Source of the DNA: Chlorokybus atmophyticus
Lineage: Eukaryota; Plantae; Mesostigma and Chlorokybus algae
Length of the DNA: 64,000 nucleotides
Direction of reading: 5' to 3'
NCBI GenBank assembly: GCA_009103225.1
Contig: RHPI01002910.1
Coordinates: forward strand, 195,645 to 259,644
The notes beneath the pieces were generated by a model. The model had not been told where the DNA came from, did not search any database, and worked only from the letters and a program-made list of their open reading frames with translations. Every line of letters starts with the position of its first letter. Within the stretch, counting starts at the first letter, position 1. Of this stretch, positions 2,473-23,347 are shown piece after piece. The position numbers and the translations under genes are program-made.

Positions 2473-5400
2473 TTATGCGGGTCGCGGCGGGCCGTTTACT
2501 GAACTCCTCGCCAACTTCTCTTTGAGCTGCACAACAGCGCACATCAACATGTGATTATCGTCTCTTTGAGCTGCACGACATCTCCGTCGTCGTTGTGAAT
2601 GATGATGTGCGGTGTCTATCTCTCACCTTCAGCTGAAGCGCACGGTGCGTGGCCACGTCCTGCCGCTCCTCGAACTTGCGGTACAGCTCCTCAGCCCGCG
2701 CCATCTGGAGACTGTTTCACCAAACGGGAGGAAACATTGACATGCACGAGTCCCAGCATCAGTATTGGTCTTTATGCGATTTGACGCACACAAGCGCGCA
2801 TGCGCACGCGCACGCGCTAACGCGTGTGTGCGTGTGTGTCTCTGTATGCATGCACTGAACAGACATACACGTGTTCGTGCGTGTTTCTCTGTGTGCATTC
2901 ACGTGCAACAACACATGCGTGCACGCACGCGCGCACGCATTCTACTGCAATCTATTTAAGGAACCCAACTGACTCTCACACACATGCACACACGTGTGCT
3001 GTATGCACGTGTCCATGGTGTGTTGCGACACAACGCATGTGCACGCACACGTATGCCCTCGTGGTCATGCACACATCGAAAGCACACACGTACGTGGCGG
3101 CTATCTCCTGCGCGAGGCTCTCTTGCGCGACCCGGTCTCTCTCCACCTCCTCCTTCTTCAGCCTCTGCTTCTCAGCCACTTGCGCCTGTTGTGTCACGCA
3201 CATATCACACGTCACGCACATGACCACCCCATACGCGATGTGTTGGTCGCATGTGCAAAAGGCTCTCACGTCGAGTGCGTCGTAGTATTGGCGCCTTCTC
3301 ATGGCCTCCGCGCCGTCCCGCACGCGCGTGTCCGGCTCGCACGGGTACGCGCCCGCAGGCACGTTGAACTGCAACAACACCAGTATCACATGAGTACCGG
3401 TACCACCTTTGAATTGCAAGACAACAAGGCACGCGTGTGTACGCAAGTGTGTGTACCTGCTCTTTCCAGGAAGCCCGGCGCAACTCGGCCTTGCGCCTTA
3501 TCTCATCCACCATCTGAGCCTTTAAGAACTCCTAAGAAGCAACGTGTGCATGTTGAAAACTTCAAACCTTTCAACCACCACCACCACCACCACCACAACA
3601 ACAACAACAGCACTTTTCTCACCCTGTACTCGCGCTCCTTCTCCATCTTCTTCGACTGCATCTTGCGCGCTTCCGCATCGAGCTGCACACAACCACACAA
3701 CACAACGATAAAAGATACGCGCTATACACCATGTGCATATTGACCGTGTGCCAATGTGGTACTACTCCTCCCCCTCACCTTGGCCTTGAGTTGTTGCGTG
3801 TACTTGTCCATGCGCTCCGCCTGCGCGGCCTCGCTCGCAAGCTTCGCCTGAAGACGCTCGTACGCAGAACGCGTCGCGCGGTCTGATGCACATGTGTTGG
3901 TTGTTGTTGATGTGGGATGATGTTGATGTTGTTTGTGTTTGTGGTGGTGGTGGTGGATGAGGGTGAGGGTGAGGGTGATGGTACCTTGGATGCTGAGGTT
4001 GATGGTAGCCGCGAGGGGGGTGCCGGCCTGTATGCGTGAGAGCATAAGCATGAACAACAGCGATGGATGTGAACAGGGAGAAGGAGGAGACGCCAATAGC
4101 GACAGACGCATGCGCACACTATGTGACAAGAAAACATGCACACACACGCAGATGCACACGCACTCGCACACAGCAGCAGCAGCCACTCACCCTGTCAATG
4201 GCGTCCTCGCACGCATCGGCCAGGTGCCTATGCAACAGCTCCGCAGACATATCTCTGAGAAATACCAGATCCAACACATCACCACCAACAACTCCCCCAC
4301 AAACAACAGTTCACACACACATTACATCATCCAACGACAAACTCACAGTTCCCTGCCGTGGTGGGGTTGTCTAAGGCCGCCTCCCTTCAAACCCGCGTTA
4401 TCGGTGTTGGCGCGGGTGGTGCTCGTTGGGTTGTTGGCGTTCGCTCGCACGGTGGTGTTGTCCTTGTTGTTGTTGTTGTTGCTGGTGATGGGGTTGCGAG
4501 GGGGCGGGGCCTTGGGCTTCACCTGCGCGTCGTGGTGTTGGTGTTGCATACCGATACACGTGTGCGCGTATAGCTGCAATTCATACTGTCTGTGTGCCGG
4601 TGTTAATTTACGGGAAAGTCTCTCTTGTGTGCGGGGGAATTACCTTTGTTGCGGGTGTAGGCACCCGCTCTTTACTACTCTGCTGCGCTGGCTTTCTCAA
4701 CTGCAGCAGGTTGTTATGTCAATTACTGACGCACCTACACAGACACGCACATGCACAGACACCAGCACGTACAACTGCAGCACGCATGCATGCACGCACC
4801 GCGCAGACACGCACGCGCACGCATCTCAACCTGCGCTGCGAGATTACGCAGCAGGGTCGCTCACCATGATGATCCCGCTCTCTCTCTCCTCCCCTCCTCC
4901 CTGCTGCGCTGCACTCCTAGCACTCATCCTCCCCCTCCCCCTCTCCCCAATCCCCTTCAGGTCCATCTCCCCCCCNNNNNNNNNNNNNNNNNNNNNNNNN
5001 NNNNNNNNNNNNNNNNNNNNNNNNNNNNNNNNNNNNNNNNNNNNNNNNNNNNNNNNNNNNNNNNNNNNNNNNNNNNNNNNNNNNNNNNNNNNNNNNNNNN
5101 NNNNNNNNNNNNNNNNNNNNNNNNNNNNNNNNNNNNNNNNNNNNNNNNNNNNNNNNNNNNNNNNNNNNNNNNNNNNNNNNNNNNNNNNNNNNNNNNNNNN
5201 NNNNNNNNNNNNNNNNNNNNNNNNNNNNNNNNNNNNNNNNNNNNNNNNNNNNNNNNNNNNNNNNNNNNNNNNNNNNNNNNNNNNNNNNNNNNNNNNNNNN
5301 NNNNNNNNNNNNNNNNNNNNNNNNNNNNNNNNNNNNNNNNNNNNNNNNNNNNNNNNNNNNNNNNNNNNNNNNNNNNNNNNNNNNNNNNNNNNNNNNNNNN

Positions 5401-6090
5401 NNNNNNNNNNNNNNNNNNNNNNNNNNNNNNNNNNNNNNNNNNNNNNNNNNNNNNNNNNNNNNNNNNNNNNNNNNNNNNNNNNNNNNNNNNNNNNNNNNNN
5501 NNNNNNNNNNNNNNNNNNNNNNNNNNNNNNNNNNNNNNNNNNNNNNNNNNNNNNNNNNNNNNNNNNNNNNNNNNNNNNNNNNNNNNNNNNNNNNNNNNNN
5601 NNNNNNNNNNNNNNNNNNNNNNNNNNNNNNNNNNNNNNNNNNNNNNNNNNNNNNNNNNNNNNNNNNNNNNNNNNNNNNNNNNNNNNNNNNNNNNNNNNNN
5701 NNNNNNNNNNNNNNNNNNNNNNNNNNNNNNNNNNNNNNNNNNNNNNNNNNNNNNNNNNGGGTGGGCGGGGGTGGGTGGGGGTGGGGATGCGTGTGTGGGC
5801 GGGCGTGCGTGCGTGTGAATCAGTGTGTATGCGTGCACAACATGTACACGCACGCACTAGGCCTGTTTTCGAGCGCGGGCGTGAGCACAACTCTATGATC
5901 GTCTGTGCGTGCTTTGTCGATGAGCTTTGATTTTGAAGTCTACCTTATTCGCGGCGAGTTGTGCCCCAATCCAGCGGGACACAGCTACCCACACTCTCTG
6001 GCACGTCTGCGGGCTCTCGCGCCTCCTCCTCGCGCACTCCTCAAACACCTCCCTCATGGAAGATGAGCCGTGTGCCCCGTCGCAAACACA
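2473..6090 (-). CDS. Multi-exon coiled-coil protein, weakly CCDC81-like; model incomplete and interrupted by the assembly gap
   Basis: Exon-like segments with splice signals encode charged helical peptides (QAQVAEKQRLKKEEVERDRVAQESLAQEIA; AYERLQAKLASEAAQAERMDKYTQQLKAK; LKEKLARSSVNGPPRPA*). The segment at ~5945-6080 (TCQRVWVAVSRWIGAQLAANK|GT) recalls, from memory, the HU-like N-terminus of CCDC81. Frame continuity across 4200-4900 is not resolved. Confidence 0.45.
4976..5758. other. Assembly gap (783 N)
   Basis: Run of N, flanked by C-rich and G-rich low-complexity sequence. Confidence 1.
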
Positions 6091-15180: not shown

Positions 15181-18091
15181 GCAGTGCATTGGTATGAAGT
15201 CGGTCTGATTGTGGCACTCGCCGGTCTCCCACTTTCTTTGCTCATTTGCTGAGTGCGGTCATCATGGAACACTTGCATACCCGAGCGGGGCGTGCTATGT
15301 CTGAGTGTGGTTTCACATGTGAGGAGGATGGCACGCGCACACTTCATGCTATGCATACTTGAGAACAACAATGTAGCAAGCGCGCAGATTGTGTGATGTG
15401 ATTTGAATGAATCAGGTTGTGTCGCCAATATCAACTTCACTTACACCAGGCTGTCTGAGCAGGCGTTGTTGGTGCTAGCTCTTGTAACATGTCGTGCGAA
15501 CGCTGTACTTGTCGTGCGGGGATACAAGCCGGCCCAAGTCGGTTGTACAACCCACTTGCTGCTCGCAGTTATACATGTATATATGCTTCCTTCCTACTTA
15601 AGAGCTTGCTTTTGCAACTCTTGTTTGTTATTTACCTTTGTCTGCGGCCAATCGCACACGCATGTGCACGCCGACGCTCACATAAGCAGCAGTAAAACTC
15701 GCATAGTTGCTATATTGTAGATATCATGATTGTATGCACTTGTAGTGGAAACCCGTTTATACAATGTATGATTTATTGTGTAACAATATGATCGTGCAAG
15801 ACATATAGCTGCTTTATGTGCTCATGATTAATGTGGTTGCCCGCAATGCGTAAGTAGCAATCAACTGTGCACAAGGGCTAACCACCCGTTACCATATGCG
15901 CAAGTAGTAAGTAGCAGTCCATCATGCACGAGGTCCTTGCAAGTGTAATGTATTGCATAATGTATGTCAAGATATGCACATTGATCAGATTACAATATAG
16001 TTCAACTTGCGATGCGCATTATACCACATCGCTCCCCTTTGAAGAAAGCGGATAAATTGCTGGTCGATCATAGGGCGTACCAACTTGCACGGTAGTGGTT
16101 GCAGAATCCCACATTTCAGAGTCACATGTGGGATGAAGGGCTTGAACTCAATGTGCACGTAGTACAATAATGTACAGCCAATCGCATAAAGTTACGGTAA
16201 CTGCTTTGGTGCAGTAATTCTATGTTGGTTTTATGCTGACGGAGCATAAATGATTGGCTATATAAGTACATTACATATATGATATAATGTATATTACAAA
16301 TACTTATAGAAATTGCTATGATCGTTTCTACACTCATATCAATATAGATAATTACGTGGTCGTAGCATATGTGACGATACAACATTCCCAAATGCTGCAC
16401 ATGTAGCTTCACAAGCTTGGCTTATGCATATCTACAAGTAATACATATTCAATATGTTTGAAATATATCTCATGTATTACGTGGATCTAAGACTGTCTGA
16501 TATGCGTGTCTATATTGAGCTCTAGTTCCCAATCTCTTACGCATCCAATTTGTGGGTATTGCTTCAAGGTGTATTGTGTGTCGCATAACAATGAGAAATT
16601 GCAAGAACATACAAGATGACTTACACAAGCAGATGACGTTTTTTGCTCCATGCATTTAACAGCCTGTGCACGATTGTTGTTGGATGTAAGGCGCGTCTCG
16701 ATGGTAGGGCGATCAACGTGCTTGCAAGTGGGAGTTCAAGCAATAATGTTATACACCGCCAATCACTCTCGCAATCAATGACAACATGCCGAGTTGCTCA
16801 TGTGCCACTAAGTATGCAACACAATATACCTCAGCTCACTGCGACCGTGTCGTGCACAATATAAACATTGACCTACATCATATGGCGCTCCGATATGCAC
16901 TTCATGAGTTGTAGACCGCAGGTGTCAAGCACTCATCTCCTCTCTGCACGCACAACAACGGACTCCTAGTAGAAGTGGGTGTGTTAACTTAGGTAGATAA
17001 CGCATAGCCGTGCAATACTTGGACTAAGACATATGCCACATTGGCCGGGATGGGTAAGAGTGCTTTCATCAAAAGTATCGTACAGTATCGTAACATTATC
17101 TGTTACCTCATCTTCAGTTACACAGATACGATACCAAACGCAGCATATGTTAAAACATTACGTTTGTTGAAGAATGTCATGGATAGCATACCTCACCGCA
17201 AAAAAACCGCCGGCGGAGGCTGTGCAATACTAGTACCGTCACGCAGGCTAGCAACATCAGCCCGCATGTGCTCAAGCTTGCTCCCATTGGTAGTTTCTTC
17301 TTTGCGTTCAACTGCACTACTTTCTGCAGTAAGAGACCGTGAGGCTGCGTCAACAGCCCCAACGACGACACAATGTGAGTGGCCGGAGTGTTACCGCATC
17401 TCATTGTCGTGCCCATCTTGCACAGTGCATCCAAAGGCTCTGGACCCCTCTTCACCACAGGCACAGGCACACGCAGTGCACATGGAGTGCCTGTCAGGCA
17501 CGTGCACATGCATACGCACACGCACAGGCACAGGCACTGCCATGAAAATTCAGTACAGGCACATTCAGACTGATTCTGGACCTCGACTGTGCTACAGGTG
17601 TGTCCGGCATGGGCCCGACCGCCCTCATGGTTTGGTCATCGCTGATGCACCGTCATCTCAGTTTAGACAAGGACTTGAAGAGAAACTAGACACTTGCCTG
17701 GGGATGAAACACTCCTTCTATAGGCGAGTATCACAGCGTGCATCACTAGCAAGTTGGGTTGTACTCACCAGCAAGCTAAACGCTACCCATACCAACTCAA
17801 GCTAGCGTGAGGTGTCCATCACCTCATTAAACTTGTATCGCGCAGCATATGGGCATGCACCTGCATTGCGGATAATAGGACAAAATTTGCGTTATCCACG
17901 CAACCTTCGCATTGAACATACGATATGCATTGAGCCATGCACTAAACAACACACCATTCATGGGTCAAAACTCTTCCTTATCCAGCAACGATTACACTAC
18001 ACTTGCTCATCCAATGACTAAAGCGCTCCCGGTATCACAAGCAATTGCAAGCAACAATGTGTCAACCAGACAATGTGTCCACAATGTCATC

Positions 18092-21000
18092 TCAAAAAAC
18101 GCCTAAAAACTTGTTGCGCGCCAATGCGGCGCGCAGTCGTCTGCCTCGTTCCCCGTTGTTATAGAGTCTATGATACGTCCAGTACGCGCCCAACACGGAC
18201 TTGACGTAATATTTCGTTTCGCCGAAAGGCAGCTGCTCGACAAACTCGTCCCACTCCATCGCCTTCGAGCGGCTGAGCCAGTCGTCAACCAGCCCTGGAC
18301 CCGCGTTATACGCAGCAATGGCAGGCACTAGGTTGTTGCCGCCGTACAGTCCACTGACCCAAGCTACATACCTTTCAACATAGAAGGGTTGTAAGCCACA
18401 AACCACAGCTGCAACTTGCATGTGCATGTGTATACGCATGTGTATATGTCTGTGCATACAAATGTGTGGATGAACGTGTGCGCGTTGATGTGTGGTTACT
18501 CTACCATGAGCCGAGGCGGACGCTGTCTGCAGCGTTCATGAGATCGTAGCTCGGGACTCTGGCGCACTCGGCAATCCACTTGGCAGTCTCGGGCATGAGC
18601 TGCATCAGGCCCCTCGCGCCGACATGAGACATTGCTTTGGCATTGAACTGAGATTCCTGCAGGCATCTGAACGTGTCAGCACTGATGCATACGGACTTCA
18701 ACTACATGATTATGGTATGCAGCGCGGACATGCGCGCAAGCGCACGCACGATGGTAACATCCACGACACCTTGTAGGGTGTCGGTGGTGCACGCACCTGT
18801 CGTATGACTGCCATAACTAGAAGCGGGTCCACGTTGTATTGCTTTGACCAGTAAGCCACCCTGTCCCAAGACACACTCTGCTTGCTATCGTCCTGCAGAA
18901 AAACCTGATATTAAAGTCGTGTTGTGTACAAGTGCCGCTCATAGTATTGCGCCAACCGACATGCCAGGGATAGAGTTGAACACCCATTTTCAAACATACA
19001 CTCTTCTGTCTACACACTTTGGGTTACCTGTATACCGCGCGGTAACGGGTACACAGCGCGCAGGAAGCCCTGGCACTTCTCTAGCTGCTTGCACAGTCTG
19101 CGCTCGAGCGGCGTGTTGGCGCGCGCCATCGCACTGGCGAGCTCCATGAGCCCAACATGCGTGTCTCCGAGACCTAATCTAGGGTTCGGTGACTCGTCAG
19201 CCCTGCAGATGCTGTTGGGCAACAAACATTGCGCGTGATAAAACTGACCTCAACAACGCTTGTGTGATGGCCTCAGCAACCGAGGGCGTTCGCTCGTGCA
19301 CGTACTCGTGCCTGTGCCAATGCTCCCATGCAGCTTTGTATTCACCTGTGGCGCGAAAACCAAACGGACACCGTGTCTATCACGCAACCATATGGCGCAA
19401 GGCACCCCTAACATGCGCGCACGCACACACGTGCGTATGCGCACATGCACACGCACCTTTGCGGTACAGATGCCGCAGCTTGATTGATCCAACAGGCAGC
19501 GGCGCGTTGTCCAGGTTCCTTCGCCGCAGGAAAAATGACTTGGCTCTGCTGCCGATGGTGGTAGTTGTGGTGGATGCGAAGGCGACGGTGCTGATATCCG
19601 TTATCAACATGCGACTCCCCGCCGTCTGCTGCTGCTGTTGTGCTGATATCATCGACTGCGCGCTGACTGCCTCACCTACAGGCGAAGAGGGCCCCTCACC
19701 TGCTATGCTCAGCGCTGCGCTGAGACCAGGCTGCAAGCACGCTGCCGCACTCCAGCCATAGTAGGACTTCAACACACAAACACACAGTGATAACTTAAGT
19801 CTCACACATGTCATTGGTGGTCACTGACTGACTGCAGTGCACGAGACTGAACCTTGCGTGCAACCGTTCAAGACTATGATAGAGCATTGCGTGCAGGAAG
19901 AGCATACTTGTGGATGGCTTGCGAGCGCTCTCCGCCACCATCTGGCAGCCTGTCTATCATGTCCTCGCTTCTTCTCTATTCGCCCATTCTAACAGCAGGG
20001 GGGGGACGTTACAAAACATGCATGACACACACCACAACGGCAACGCGATGCAGTGTTGCAATTGGGTACGAACAGGACTTACCCAGTACAGCGCCCCAGC
20101 AGCGTATGCGCTTTGCAGGTTGGCTTTCGCTATGCCCTGAGACAAATCAGTGTCACTCAGTCACGATCGACGAGCACAAACAACAACCGCGCCACGGGTA
20201 CAGCAGTCAAATTTGTGCTTGACAACAACCACAAGCACAACCACGCGCGTTGAGCAACAATAGTCGTGAAGAATCAAAATTACAGAGAGAGACAAGCAGC
20301 AGAAAGTAACTGTGCCTGCAGCTGATCCAGCGCTTGCGGCCACTGCCCTTGCTTCAACGCAGCCATTGCCCCGTCCCACCTCACCTGATGCCAAGACATG
20401 CTGAGAATATGCAACACCACACCTGAATAGGTAGTAATTTGCTAGTTCTCCATTAAGCGATTGCAGGTACTGACCTCCGCAGCCGCATGACTTGTCGGAT
20501 GCCTTTCCAAAATCAGCTGCTCAGCTGCATGCAGCGCAGCCTACAGTCGGTACAGTCACTCACTCTGGTTGTTGAAGGGAGCAACAACAACAACAACATA
20601 AGCCACATGTAATGCATGACAGGATCAATGAGCTCCCTCTTACCTGTGCATCATCCGCAGCTTTCTTGCGCTGCTTCATCGCCGTGCTTCCAGCATACGA
20701 CGCACGGATGCTCGCGGCCTGCGCCCGCGCGGTGGCCGCTTCCGCATGCAGTATGCGCCGCAGGGCCGAACGCGCTGCGGTGCTCGCGGCCGGGCAGTCT
20801 TTCGCAAGTGTCTGTTGCGGGCAATGAGACCGTCGCGTTGTAGAGCACAAAGATGTCACTGGCTATCAACAGGCATAGAACATGTAAGCTCACTTCAAGA
20901 TGCTCGACGGTCTCTACTCGGTTCGTGGACAAGCAGGCGAGCCGCCATCTGGCCTGAGAAGGCAAATTTGATCACGATGATATACTCAATTTTGGCGCAA

Positions 21001-22130
21001 TGTACCAACAATGATTGCAGCGCATTGCGTTTGCAACAGTAAGTGGGACTCATCATGCAGCAAGTGGGATGAGTCTCAGCAGCATTGTGAACATGCTAGC
21101 GTTACATGACAGTAGAGATGCGCACACAGACACCAACAACTGCTAGCCCAGAATACCACCATGCCTGTGCACCAGCAGCGCTTCGGTTATCTCGTCGCAC
21201 CACACTTCTGTACATCTGCCTGGCAGCGTCCCGCATGCCTTCGAGCTCCAACCAGCTGTCGATGAAACAGAAGTCAGCGCATGCAAGCTTGACCTCTTGC
21301 AACGGCTGTTGCTTGGAAAAGAAACCCCGTGCAAATGTAATACTTACAGGCCATGTCTGTACATCAGATTCGAACGGTCGAATGCGCGCACGAGCAATGG
21401 CCGTCTCCGCTCAGGCGCAAGCTTCAATACCTACACAAAGCTTCAAATCAACAACCAAAGGTACCGAGATCATGGTGAATGCATGTGCATGCCTTCATAC
21501 ACACAAGATAATGCAATGCCGTGATTGTGCAGGCTCACGCACGCACGTGCACACGCATGTGCATGCATGTACATACATGCACATGCACAGACGCGCGCAC
21601 ACGCGCATATGCATGCATAGGTACTCCCCGTTGATTGCTTCACTGACCTGTGTTGCATACTCTTCAAACTCCACATTGCCAACCAGCACCGGCTCTGCGG
21701 ATGTAACATATTGTGTCATATTATGTACGTGCTGACGGCATACCATACTCATATAAGCTCAAGCAAAACAACACTGGCATGTCACACTTTACAACCACAT
21801 ACACACATGCTGGGTGACGACTTAACGACTGAACCTGCTGGCAACAGCAGCTTGCGCAGCCGAGACTCCGCCTGGACGAGCTCTCCCAGCAGCAGCACAG
21901 GCAGCTCTGGCCCTGCAAGTGGAAGGGAGAAAGAAAGAGATCAGATCGCAGAAAAGCACAAGCGATCAAATGAACGCCCGAGGCTATCAGGCTCAGTACA
22001 AAGGCAGAAGTGCCGAATGCTCACAGATCGCCATGCCGCTTGCCGCGTGCGCCAGTCTAGACAGCACTCCCTCAGCTGCCGAGAGAAGCACCAGCACCAG
22101 CACCAGCACCAAGCTCAGCTGCCATTAACT
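18092..22130 (-). CDS. slt: Soluble lytic murein transglycosylase (Slt family), cyanobacterial type; firm 3' exons ~19212-19030, 18892-18797, 18656-18505, 18371-18092; 5' exons and start uncertain
   Basis: Spliced C-terminal domain: AVYPLP...VDPLLVMAVIRQ|ESQFNAKAMSHVGARGLMQLMPETAKWIA...DSVRLGSW|YVAWV...AIAAYNAGPGLVDDWL...DEFVEQLPFGETKYYVKSVLGAYWTYHRLYN. All SLT motifs are present, including the catalytic Glu (QES). Upstream exons are helical/TPR-like (e.g. DAARQMYRSVVRRDNRSAAGAQAW). Confidence 0.93.
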
Positions 22131-23347
22131 TCATGAGCAGGGCAAGCTGCAGCGCTGTCGGCTACAGCCAGCTACAGCAATGGCTCCTCTCGCTCGTCCT
22201 CCTCATCTCTGTCCTTGGTCGACGTGTCCCGACTGCCGCCGCCGCCGCCGCGGACTTGCCCGCCACGTCAGCGTAAGGCGATCACCATGCCACTTCACCC
22301 CCTTGTGTTGTCACCATCTCACACAAGGTTTGCTAACTAGAGTGCGTCGTTGTTTATGTGAGTGGCTAACTCTGTGACAATGTTGTCACCACAAGGACGT
22401 CAACTCAGCGCTTTACACAACGCGCATGCAATAAAAATCGAAGAGTCACAACACCCACGCACTGTACTGTATAACACCGCGGTTGCTAGCATCAACCTGC
22501 TCCGGTTGTGTGTATCACATCACCTCAGGAAGTGGTTACCACTGTTGCTGCTGGTTTACTGCTGTGGTGTGTGAATCACAGGGATTGCATAATGCCCCAC
22601 ACAACGAGACGGCTAGGCTTGTGTTCAACGCTGTATACCAATGATGTAGTGTTGCTGCGTGCATGTTGCATGTCTATGCGCGTGCGAAACAGCACTTATG
22701 AAAATTCTATAAACAACAAGACAGCCAGGGACTTGTTTGGCAGCGAAGTTCACATTGCAATGTCGTAAAACCTGTTGCAGCCATGCTGTGGCATGTGAAA
22801 TGGAGCGTATACAATTACCTTCCATGTGCGAGTGCCAGCATATGTGCATGTGTGAGTGCCAGAGCGTGTGCATGTGCAAGCACACAATTCGCCTGATGGA
22901 GCAGCATGTCCACACTTACCCAACTCGTGACTCGTGAACACTGCCGCGTTTTCGCATTACATGACAATGGCACAGTCAACGTTGCTGGTCGCCGTGTGTA
23001 CAAAGAAGGCAGCGCAGGAGTGCCCATGCACGGTATACGCAGTGCTCATGCACACGACACCACTAATATATCACTAATTCACCACCGCGCTACCTAGCTA
23101 CTTAGAGCACTACCGCTACCCACTAGCACTAGCACCCCGATGGTCATGCAAGCATGCAGCCCAATGTTGCAATCACCTGCACATTGGCTGCATGGGTATT
23201 CATTCAATCATATGTCACTTCATTCAGTACACTTAGCCAACCAAGTGTTTCATCACTCTGTACAGAGCTAATCTGAGATGTCAACAGGCAAACCGCCACA
23301 CACGGACGCCAACGAACCCACCGACAAACAAACCAAACAACATCACT

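What the first reader, a model, noticed from the sequence alone, without database searches (positions are those of the whole stretch)
18092..22130. Intron-containing, cyanobacterial-type lytic murein transglycosylase in a eukaryotic alga
Seen: a complete SLT catalytic domain split over spliceosomal exons, with an intron immediately before the catalytic Glu codon (18656-18654), so this is a nuclear gene and not bacterial contamination. Known: SLTs cleave peptidoglycan glycan strands, and plastid peptidoglycan exists in glaucophytes, mosses and some green algae. From memory, the tail MPETAKWIA...DEFVE.LPF.ETK.YVKSV...YW.Y.RLYN is typical of cyanobacterial Slt. Inference: an endosymbiont-derived enzyme remodelling a plastid murein layer during division. 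The long, divergent Ser/Ala-rich helical N-terminal half is unexplained.
Basis: partly seen in the sequence, partly recalled or inferred. Interest (0 to 1): 0.85.

Follow-up and report, generated by a model that had tools for sequence, protein, structure and literature searches.

The report
Algal nuclear gene for wall-cutting enzyme
The green alga Chlorokybus expresses a 17-exon nuclear gene, inherited from cyanobacteria, for an intact enzyme that cuts bacterial-type cell wall; it most likely trims the thin wall around the chloroplast, but it carries no recognisable chloroplast address label.

Summary
The window is Chlorokybus atmophyticus nuclear DNA. Spliced transcript contigs from two independent studies define a 17-exon, 630-aa gene on the minus strand (ATG 22034, stop 18094-18092). 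It has 14 GT-AG and 2 GC-AG introns. One phase-0 intron ends directly before the catalytic Glu codon (18656-18654).

The protein is an Slt70-type (GH23, family 1A) lytic transglycosylase with every family-invariant residue kept. The "unexplained" N-terminal half is the homologous superhelical U and L domains. It is truncated: the signal peptide and the first ~215-285 residues of cyanobacterial homologues are missing, and a low-complexity loop is inserted.

In an ML tree the alga and its only eukaryotic relative found, Mesostigma, sit inside the cyanobacterial Slt clade (100/100). The sister is Gloeomargarita, weakly supported.

Cyanobacterial origin is therefore supported. A role on plastid peptidoglycan is plausible but inferred. 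Neither alga has an N-terminal transit-peptide extension, and one transcript assembly carries an unproductive splice form.

I found no published description. One paper states that green algae use GH103 rather than GH23. This is a new member of a known kind, of moderate interest.

The parts
17962..22299 (-). Transcribed span of the Slt gene as covered by transcript contigs (3' UTR to about 17962, 5' UTR to at least 22299)
   Evidence: X1 contig (1988 nt) starts at 17962. X2 contig (2091 nt) reaches 22299 (table 8).
22025..22034 (-). Exon 1, coding part (ATG 22034-22032; codons 1-3 plus 1 nt)
   Evidence: The X2 contig bridges 21912 to 22045 over 17 letters the tool left unplaced, which match window 22041-22025. 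X1 record 3 covers 22024-22145 without gaps. In-frame TAA at 22127-22125.
21835..21912 (-). Exon 2
   Evidence: Joints in X1 and X2; model.
21648..21694 (-). Exon 3
   Evidence: Joints 21694>21835 and 21428>21646 (cut +2), both runs.
21348..21430 (-). Exon 4
   Evidence: Joints in both runs.
21165..21255 (-). Exon 5; followed by the GC-AG intron 5 (21164-20954)
   Evidence: Joint 20951>21163, both=5, in X1 and X2. Only the +2 register gives a canonical border, GC..AG.
20894..20953 (-). Exon 6
   Evidence: Joints in both runs.
20644..20811 (-). Exon 7
   Evidence: Joints in both runs.
20475..20540 (-). Exon 8
   Evidence: Joints in both runs.
20316..20384 (-). Exon 9 (productive form); followed by the GC-AG intron 9 (20315-20137)
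   Evidence: Joint 20135>20315 in X2 only. It keeps the frame and the homology to Mesostigma on both sides.
20309..20315 (-). Alternative GT donor 5 nt downstream (GT at 20310-20309); its use adds GCACA, shifts the frame and gives ...LQAQA-stop
   Evidence: The X1 contig has 5 more letters than X2 between exons 12 and 7 and lacks the GC-donor joint (table 8 arithmetic). Translation. Inferred: the X1 joint itself was not listed.
20083..20136 (-). Exon 10
   Evidence: Joints.
19908..19988 (-). Exon 11
   Evidence: Joints in both runs.
19457..19766 (-). Exon 12; holds the end of the U-like domain, the Ser/Ala/Thr/Gln-rich low-complexity loop (codons ~291-355, 19703-19509) and the start of the L-like domain
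   Evidence: Joints in both runs. Sequence. The matching stretch of the Mesostigma model has pLDDT under 50.
19249..19345 (-). Exon 13
   Evidence: Joints in both runs.
19028..19178 (-). Exon 14 (L-like domain)
   Evidence: Joints. Residues 355-455 are 39.8% identical to Gloeomargarita Slt.
18797..18892 (-). Exon 15 (start of the SLT domain; ...VMAVIRQ)
   Evidence: Joints; alignment A1.
18505..18656 (-). Exon 16; its first codon GAA 18656-18654 is the catalytic Glu488; carries the ES and GLMQLMP motifs
   Evidence: Pfam SLT 44.4 bits on this exon alone. E, S, G, L, M, Q and P are invariant in A1.
18092..18371 (-). Exon 17; AYNAG motif, C-terminal tail, stop TGA 18094-18092
   Evidence: 100% identical to the end of EukProt Chlorokybus protein P0001.
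19704..21388 (-). Codons ~60-290: truncated Slt70-type superhelical (U-like, TPR-like) domain
   Evidence: BLASTP of residues 1-290 alone hits cyanobacterial Slt at their residues ~216-545, up to 72 bits. The model of the ortholog aligns with Slt 5ohu and Slt70 1qte at Z 25.
22072..22134 (-).
   Evidence: Direct reading. Covered without a gap by X1 and X2 contigs. Different frame from the main ORF.

Best explanation
This is an expressed nuclear gene of Chlorokybus atmophyticus. It descends from a cyanobacterial slt gene, most simply one carried by the plastid ancestor.

It encodes a catalytically intact Slt70-type (GH23, family 1A) lytic transglycosylase of 630 aa. The parts are a ~60-aa algal-specific N-terminal segment, a shortened superhelical U-like domain, a disordered low-complexity loop, an L-like helical domain and the SLT catalytic domain.

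By analogy with Slt70, Glu488 protonates the MurNAc-GlcNAc glycosidic bond and then helps the C6-OH attack. This cuts the glycan strand without water and leaves a 1,6-anhydro-MurNAc end.

The likeliest substrate is the peptidoglycan layer that streptophyte algae are thought to keep between the two plastid envelope membranes. Strand cutting there would allow envelope growth, division and turnover.

Shown: gene structure, expression, fold and family, retained catalytic residues, cyanobacterial ancestry. Inferred: enzymatic activity, substrate, location and any link to plastid division.
For: - Organism and gene: the last exon is 100% identical to EukProt Chlorokybus_atmophyticus Chrsp76S07653.
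- Splicing and expression: contigs of two runs from different studies (the tool only guesses that they are RNA) skip all 16 introns; the result is a 1893-nt ORF.
- Family: Pfam SLT at 98 bits. The best solved relatives are LtgA, Slt70 and P. aeruginosa Slt.
- Fold: the AF2 model of the Mesostigma ortholog matches Slt 5ohu at Z 25.1 over model residues 56-808 and Slt70 1qte at Z 24.6. SLT-only enzymes reach Z 17-19.
- Active site: all 15 columns invariant in 43 homologues are kept in both algae, including E-S, Q, Y-N-G and the tail Y.
- N-terminal half: it aligns on its own with cyanobacterial Slt.
- Phylogeny: the careful ML tree puts the algal pair inside a 100/100 clade that otherwise holds only cyanobacteria. 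The ML sister is Gloeomargarita at 66/88.
- Constraint: 6 of 8 exonic differences between two Chlorokybus samples are synonymous.
- Eukaryotic make-up: exon GC is 0.59 and intron GC 0.48.
- Pathway context: all streptophyte algae are reported to encode the 10 core peptidoglycan enzymes (PMC7455551). Other first readers noted MurG, MraY, Ddl, MltB, an amidase and NamZ in this genome (unchecked).
Against: - There is no N-terminal extension that could be a transit peptide. An in-frame stop lies upstream of the ATG within the contig-covered 5' UTR.
- Mesostigma starts at the same residue.
- The first 60 aa hold 8 Glu and are more conserved (56%) than the adjacent domain (41%).
- The bacterial signal peptide and the first ~215-285 residues are missing, so the route to the intermembrane space is unknown.
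- The X1 assembly carries a +5-nt splice form with a premature stop.
- Only two eukaryotes have the gene in the searches made, which also fits a later transfer.
- A position for the algae outside all cyanobacteria is not rejected (p-AU 0.35).
- No activity or localisation data exist.
Confidence: 0.6

Rival explanations
1. Same enzyme and same plastid-wall role, but the gene came by a later horizontal transfer from a cyanobacterium into the common ancestor of Chlorokybus and Mesostigma, not from the plastid ancestor.
For: - Only these two algae appear among eukaryotes in the full-length and N-terminal searches and in the exhaustive search with the last exon.
- Burns et al. report GH103, not GH23, for green algae and plants (PMC5741210).
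- The position inside the cyanobacterial clade is poorly resolved.
Against: - The ML sister is Gloeomargarita, which I recall as the closest known relative of plastids.
- The stem branch is long, and 16 introns plus native base make-up argue for an old residence.
- Cyanophora is reported to have GH23, which could be the same inheritance. I could not fetch that sequence.
- The searches list only the best 120-150 hits, so other eukaryotic copies may be hidden.
Confidence: 0.2
2. The enzyme does not work on the plastid wall. Lacking any targeting peptide, it stays in the cytosol or reaches another place. There it would act on bacterial peptidoglycan or its fragments (defence, digestion, signalling), or it has taken on a non-catalytic role.
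For: - There is no transit or signal peptide, and the N-terminal 60 aa are acidic and conserved.
- The ring domain is truncated.
- Other first readers noted peptidoglycan hydrolases without targeting peptides in this genome (unchecked).
Against: - A cytosolic lytic transglycosylase has no known substrate.
- The full catalytic set is conserved in two lineages that separated very long ago.
- The genome is reported to keep the whole peptidoglycan pathway, which gives a natural substrate.
- Routes into the chloroplast intermembrane space are not well understood.
Confidence: 0.17
3. The gene is decaying, a unitary pseudogene in the making, and makes no working enzyme.
For: - The X1 contig carries the +5-nt form with a premature stop after codon ~227.
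- The gene has an upstream ORF in the leader, two weak GC donors and an N-terminal truncation.
Against: - The X2 contig is fully in frame across all 16 junctions.
- The 630-codon ORF is intact.
- All invariant residues are kept.
- 6 of 8 differences between samples are synonymous.
- An ortholog with the same architecture exists in Mesostigma.
Confidence: 0.04
4. Bacterial contamination or an assembly artefact.
For: The closest relatives outside the two algae are all bacterial.
Against: - There are 16 spliceosomal introns with canonical borders, removed in transcript contigs from two studies.
- The best identity to any bacterium is only about 34% over about 500 aligned columns.
- The gene is embedded in a 64-kb window of similar make-up.
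Confidence: 0.01

Closest known systems
Cyanobacterial soluble lytic transglycosylases (Slt; e.g. Gloeomargarita MEN9234269, Ca. Synechococcus calcipolaris WP_277866573, Prochlorothrix MEB3273840)
   Same: - Collinear from algal residue ~60 to the end: TPR-like superhelix, L-like domain, SLT domain and the tail DxFVExIPFxETxxYVKSVxGxYWxYxRLYN.
- About 34% identity over ~500 columns.
- Same clade at 100/100.
   Different: - The alga lacks the signal peptide and the first ~215-285 residues.
- It has a new ~60-aa N-terminal segment and a ~65-aa low-complexity loop.
- It is nuclear with 16 introns.
E. coli Slt70 (1QSA/1QTE), P. aeruginosa Slt (5OHU), Neisseria LtgA (5O1J): family 1A 'doughnut' lytic transglycosylases
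   Same: - U-like + L-like + catalytic domain architecture.
- Z 24-25 with 346-376 residues aligned for the ortholog's model.
- Catalytic Glu-Ser, GLMQ and AYNAG motifs.
   Different: - About 23% identity.
- The match starts at chain residue ~74-119, so the first helices of the ring are absent.
- Whether the ring still closes was not examined.
- No periplasmic export signal.
Plant and green-algal plastid peptidoglycan lytic transglycosylase of the MltB/GH103 type. Presence in green algae and plants is from PMC5741210. The moss knock-out work of Utsunomiya et al. 2021 is known to me only by its title and from memory.
   Same: Nuclear gene of bacterial ancestry, presumed to cut plastid peptidoglycan.
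   Different: - A different glycoside-hydrolase family and fold family (GH103 versus GH23).
- As I recall, the moss proteins were shown by GFP to enter chloroplasts; I could not read the paper.
Mesostigma viride Mv00601 (EukProt EP00899 P002709), the only eukaryotic ortholog found
   Same: - Same start position and same domain order.
- 52% identity over 504 aligned columns.
- Forms a 100/100 pair with the Chlorokybus protein.
   Different: 817 aa with an extra ~165-aa low-confidence insert before the SLT domain. This may be a gene-model error; no genome or RNA was checked.

Membership tests
SLT / GH23 lytic transglycosylase domain (Pfam PF01464) | Profile match above the curated cut-off | tested here: met
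   98.2 bits against a cut-off of 21.3 on the annotated protein. Exon 16 alone scores 44.4 bits.
SLT / GH23 lytic transglycosylase domain (Pfam PF01464) | Catalytic Glu followed by Ser (ES), plus the GLMQ and AYNxG motifs | tested here: met
   E488-S489, GLMQLMP and AAYNAGPG are present. These columns are invariant in A1 and A2.
SLT / GH23 lytic transglycosylase domain (Pfam PF01464) | Non-hydrolytic cleavage giving 1,6-anhydro-MurNAc | not testable with these tools
   Needs an enzyme assay.
Family 1A (Slt70-like) lytic transglycosylases | N-terminal alpha-superhelical U domain plus L domain before the catalytic domain | tested here: met
   - Model of the Mesostigma ortholog: Z 25.1 to 5ohu (model 56-808) and Z 24.6 to 1qte, against Z 17-19 for SLT-only enzymes.
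- The Chlorokybus protein is collinear with it.
- Its residues 1-290 alone hit cyanobacterial Slt N-terminal parts.
- The Chlorokybus protein itself was not folded.
Family 1A (Slt70-like) lytic transglycosylases | Complete ring-forming U domain | tested here: inconclusive
   The match begins at Slt residue ~74-119 and at cyanobacterial residue ~216-286. The first helices are missing or replaced by a low-confidence 60-aa segment. Ring closure was not examined.
Family 1A (Slt70-like) lytic transglycosylases | N-terminal signal peptide for export to the periplasm | tested here: not met
   The protein starts MAIWPELPVLLLGELVQAESRL, with no long hydrophobic core and with acidic residues. There is an in-frame stop upstream. 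No signal-peptide predictor was available.
Cyanobacterial Slt clade | Branches within cyanobacterial sequences in a tree with other phyla | tested here: met
   The 32-row clade at 100/100 holds 25 rows named as cyanobacteria (Gloeobacter to Nostoc), 5 unnamed rows and the two algae. Gastranaerophilales, Proteobacteria, Gemmatimonadota and others lie outside.
Endosymbiotic gene transfer from the plastid ancestor | Sister to the plastid-related cyanobacterial lineage and shared among archaeplastid lineages | tested here: inconclusive
   Gloeomargarita is the ML sister, but only at 66/88. A position for the algae outside cyanobacteria is not rejected (p-AU 0.35). Only two eukaryotes were found. 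The Cyanophora GH23 could not be fetched.
Plastid-targeted nuclear-encoded proteins | Cleavable N-terminal transit peptide: an extension over the bacterial homologue, poor in acidic residues and poorly conserved | tested here: not met
   There is no extension. 8 of the first 60 residues are Glu, and the segment is 56% identical to Mesostigma. No targeting predictor was available, and non-canonical import is not excluded.

The most novel reading that the evidence does not exclude
Chlorokybus and Mesostigma alone among green plants kept the plastid ancestor's GH23 Slt, which contradicts the published GH103-only picture for the green lineage. The enzyme would reach the peptidoglycan in the plastid intermembrane space without a cleavable presequence. 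The conserved ~60-residue N-terminal segment, which replaced the bacterial signal peptide and first repeats, would act as a new kind of envelope or intermembrane-space address or docking element. Choice between the GC donor (productive) and the GT donor 5 nt away (premature stop) would tune how much enzyme is made.
Probability: 0.15. Interest if true: 0.7.

Novelty: new member of a known kind. Interest (0 to 1): 0.5.

Why it matters
Plastid peptidoglycan in green plants is known mainly through its synthesis genes. How the wall is opened for growth and division is much less studied.

One comparative paper states that green algae and plants have GH103 lytic transglycosylases, whereas the glaucophyte Cyanophora has GH23 (PMC5741210). 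This gene shows an expressed, intact, cyanobacterium-derived GH23 Slt70-type enzyme in the earliest-branching streptophyte algae. The green ancestor therefore probably had both kinds.

The gene also gives a clean test case for how a soluble wall enzyme without a presequence could reach the space between the two envelope membranes.

Finally, it corrects the public gene model, which has the wrong start and about five mis-called exons.

Tried and rejected
It is a 20-codon upstream ORF with a stop. The annotated model skips that stop with an intron that the transcript contigs do not show.
- My GT-AG guesses for introns 5 and 9: rejected in favour of the GC-AG borders given by the contigs.
- 'Cyanobacterial type' from the 92-aa last exon alone: not decisive. 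103 of the top 148 representatives are under 45% identical to any of the 80 fetched cyanobacterial proteins, so they are probably mostly not cyanobacterial. Full-length comparison and trees were needed.
- The 80 genome loci, all cyanobacterial: treated as biased, because the search patterns came from a mostly cyanobacterial alignment.
- Looking up the Mesostigma gene's contig: not on record. Intron positions therefore could not be compared.
- Search for further eukaryotic orthologs with the N-terminal 300 residues: only the two algae.
- Literature searches for Slt, GH23 or lytic transglycosylase in streptophyte algae or Cyanophora: nothing specific except Burns 2015. Utsunomiya 2021 is not held.
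- Folding the RNA-supported Chlorokybus protein: left out. The Mesostigma ortholog was folded instead.
- Pfam on three long ORFs elsewhere in the window, including one in the low-GC block at 4-6 kb: no family.
Full report
**Source and gene model**

The last exon (window 18095-18370, minus strand) is 100% identical to the end of EukProt protein EP00898 Chlorokybus_atmophyticus P007972, JGI Chlat1 model Chrsp76S07653, here P0001. The window is therefore nuclear DNA of the streptophyte alga Chlorokybus atmophyticus.

Two runs from different studies (X1, 2013; X2, 2021) hold contigs of 1988 and 2091 nt that lie on the stretch as a chain of blocks with every intron skipped; the tool only guesses that these runs are RNA. 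From their joints I built a model of 17 exons and 16 introns. The ORF is 1893 nt and the protein 630 aa, with ATG at 22034 and stop at 18094-18092.

Fourteen introns are GT-AG. Two are GC-AG: 21164-20954, seen in both runs, and 20315-20137, seen in X2. Introns are 70-217 nt long with GC 0.48, against 0.59 for the exons.

Intron 15 is phase 0 and ends directly before GAA 18656-18654, the catalytic Glu488.

**Corrections at the 5' end and to the public model**

The main frame has a TAA at 22127-22125 inside the 5' UTR covered by the contigs, so translation starts at 22034.

The public model P0001 (582 aa) differs from the transcript-supported protein in five places. It has an invented N-terminus and three wrong or missing exon parts in the superhelical region, including the whole 23-aa exon 9; one further 8-aa stretch is missing.

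**What the protein is**

- Pfam finds SLT (PF01464) at 98 bits.
- The best solved relatives by sequence are Neisseria LtgA, E. coli Slt70 and P. aeruginosa Slt.
- All 15 columns invariant among 43 aligned homologues are kept in both algal proteins. These include the Glu-Ser pair, the Q of GLMQ, Y-N-G of AYNAG and the tail Tyr.

**The N-terminal half**

The N-terminal half is not an orphan. The full protein aligns in one piece with cyanobacterial Slt proteins from algal residue ~60-70 to the end, for example 32% identity over residues 68-611 with Ca. Synechococcus calcipolaris. Residues 1-290 alone still hit the N-terminal parts of cyanobacterial Slt at up to 72 bits. Residues 355-455 are 39.8% identical to Gloeomargarita.

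The alignments start at cyanobacterial residues ~216-286. The alga has therefore lost the signal peptide and the first repeats.

I could not hand the spliced Chlorokybus protein to the folding tool, because it has no single reference. I folded the Mesostigma ortholog P0002 with a 43-row alignment instead. Residues ~65-285, 385-485 and 655-805 have pLDDT above 90. Two inserts are disordered.

The model matches P. aeruginosa Slt (5ohu) at Z 25.1 over model residues 56-808, and E. coli Slt70 (1qte) at Z 24.6. Enzymes that share only the SLT domain reach Z 17-19. The 'Ser/Ala-rich helical' half is thus the truncated U-like and L-like superhelix of a family 1A lytic transglycosylase. A low-complexity loop (about residues 291-355 in Chlorokybus) is inserted in it.

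**Origin**

The exhaustive search with the 92-aa last exon found one close relative: Mesostigma viride Mv00601, 66% identical over the exon. After that came a flat list of bacterial proteins. Most of these are under 45% identical to any of the 80 fetched cyanobacterial proteins, so the exon alone decides nothing.

The 80 best loci from 185,579 species genomes are all cyanobacterial. The search patterns were biased towards that group, so I did not rely on this.

A careful ML tree of 60 proteins and 671 columns under LG+C20+F+G4 settles the question. The two algae pair at 100/100 and lie inside a 100/100 clade of 32 rows. Its other 30 rows are 25 named as cyanobacteria (from Gloeobacter and Anthocerotibacter to Nostocales) and 5 unnamed ones (labels). 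Gastranaerophilales (Melainabacteria), Proteobacteria, Gemmatimonadota and others are outside.

In the ML tree the sister of the algae is Gloeomargarita, at 66/88. From my own knowledge this is the lineage held to be closest to plastids. The support is weak, and a tree with the algae outside all cyanobacteria is not rejected (p-AU 0.35).

Searches with the whole protein and with the N-terminal 300 residues found no other eukaryote. Those lists are capped, so absence elsewhere is not shown.

**Is it in use?**

- X2 is in frame across all junctions.
- X2 differs from the window at 8 exonic sites. Six are synonymous, and the two replacements (T166A, V330A) lie in poorly conserved parts.
- X1 is identical in sequence to the window, but it carries 5 more letters than X2 between exons 12 and 7 and lacks the GC-donor joint. 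The only canonical reading is use of the GT donor at 20310-20309. That shifts the frame and stops at ...LQAQA*.
- The X1 joint itself was among the rows not shown, so this is inferred. Contigs cannot say which form is commoner.

**Location**

This is the weak point of the plastid reading. The protein has no extension over its bacterial relatives; it is shorter. Its first 60 residues contain 8 Glu. They are 56% identical to Mesostigma, which starts at the same position; the adjacent U-like domain is only 41% identical. None of this looks like a transit peptide or a signal peptide. I had no targeting predictor.

On the other side, all streptophyte algae are reported to encode the ten core peptidoglycan enzymes (PMC7455551). 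Other first readers of this genome noted MurG, MraY, Ddl, MltB, an amidase, VanY, NlpC/P60 and NamZ (unchecked by me). A LysM membrane protein was noted in this same window. The natural substrate is therefore likely present, between the envelope membranes. How a presequence-less soluble protein would get there is open.

**Comparison with what is known**

Nuclear genes for plastid peptidoglycan synthesis are well known in glaucophytes, some green algae, bryophytes and ferns.

For hydrolases I could only see the title of Utsunomiya et al. 2021; the paper is not held.

Burns et al. 2015 state that green algae and plants have GH103 whereas Cyanophora has GH23 (PMC5741210). I found no paper that mentions an Slt, GH23 or lytic transglycosylase of Chlorokybus or Mesostigma.

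The gene is thus a new member of a known kind. It adds a GH23 Slt70-type enzyme to the green lineage and raises a targeting puzzle.

**Verdict**

Interest is moderate.

Noticed in passing
window 22072-22134 (-): A 20-codon upstream ORF (MKLMAAELGAGAGAGASLGS) lies in the 5' UTR, in a different frame from the main ORF. The public gene model fuses it to the main ORF through an intron that the transcript contigs do not show.
   Followed up: partly
window 20309-20316 (-): Two competing donors lie 5 nt apart at the end of exon 9. The GC donor (in the X2 contig) gives the full protein. The GT donor (inferred for the X1 contig) gives a premature stop. This may be regulated unproductive splicing or noise.
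   Followed up: partly
window 18092-22134 (-), versus protein P0001: The public JGI/EukProt model Chrsp76S07653 (582 aa) disagrees with the transcript contigs in five places. The N-terminus is wrong, exon 5 is read in the wrong frame, exon 9 is missing, 8 aa are cut from exon 12, and exon 13 is replaced.
   Followed up: yes
window 4001-6000: A block of 35% GC sits in a ~53% GC window. It has long ORFs on both strands (e.g. 3933-5930, 665 aa), no Pfam match for that ORF and no large tandem repeat. Its nature is unknown.
   Followed up: partly
window 20581-20598 and 22233-22268: Short low-complexity tracts ((GTT)n-like in intron 7, (GCG)n in the 5' UTR) attract contig pieces from runs of other organisms (X3, X4). 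These are chance matches, not homologues of the gene.
   Followed up: no
window 21540-21625, 19400-19455, 18390-18500 (-): Several introns carry imperfect GTGCGTGCATG / CACA-type microsatellite-like tracts.
   Followed up: no
window 22025-22044 (-), and 8 exonic sites: The X2 sample (2021 study) differs from the window by a 3-nt deletion and one substitution in the 5' UTR and by 8 exonic substitutions. X1 is identical. X2 is probably another strain or a cryptic Chlorokybus species.
   Followed up: partly
That makes two peptidoglycan-related genes in one window; I did not examine it.
   Followed up: no
protein P0002 (Mesostigma), residues 488-654: The ortholog has a ~165-aa Gly/Ala/Pro-rich stretch with pLDDT under 50, just before the SLT domain and absent from Chlorokybus and bacteria. 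It may be an unspliced intron in that gene model.
   Followed up: no
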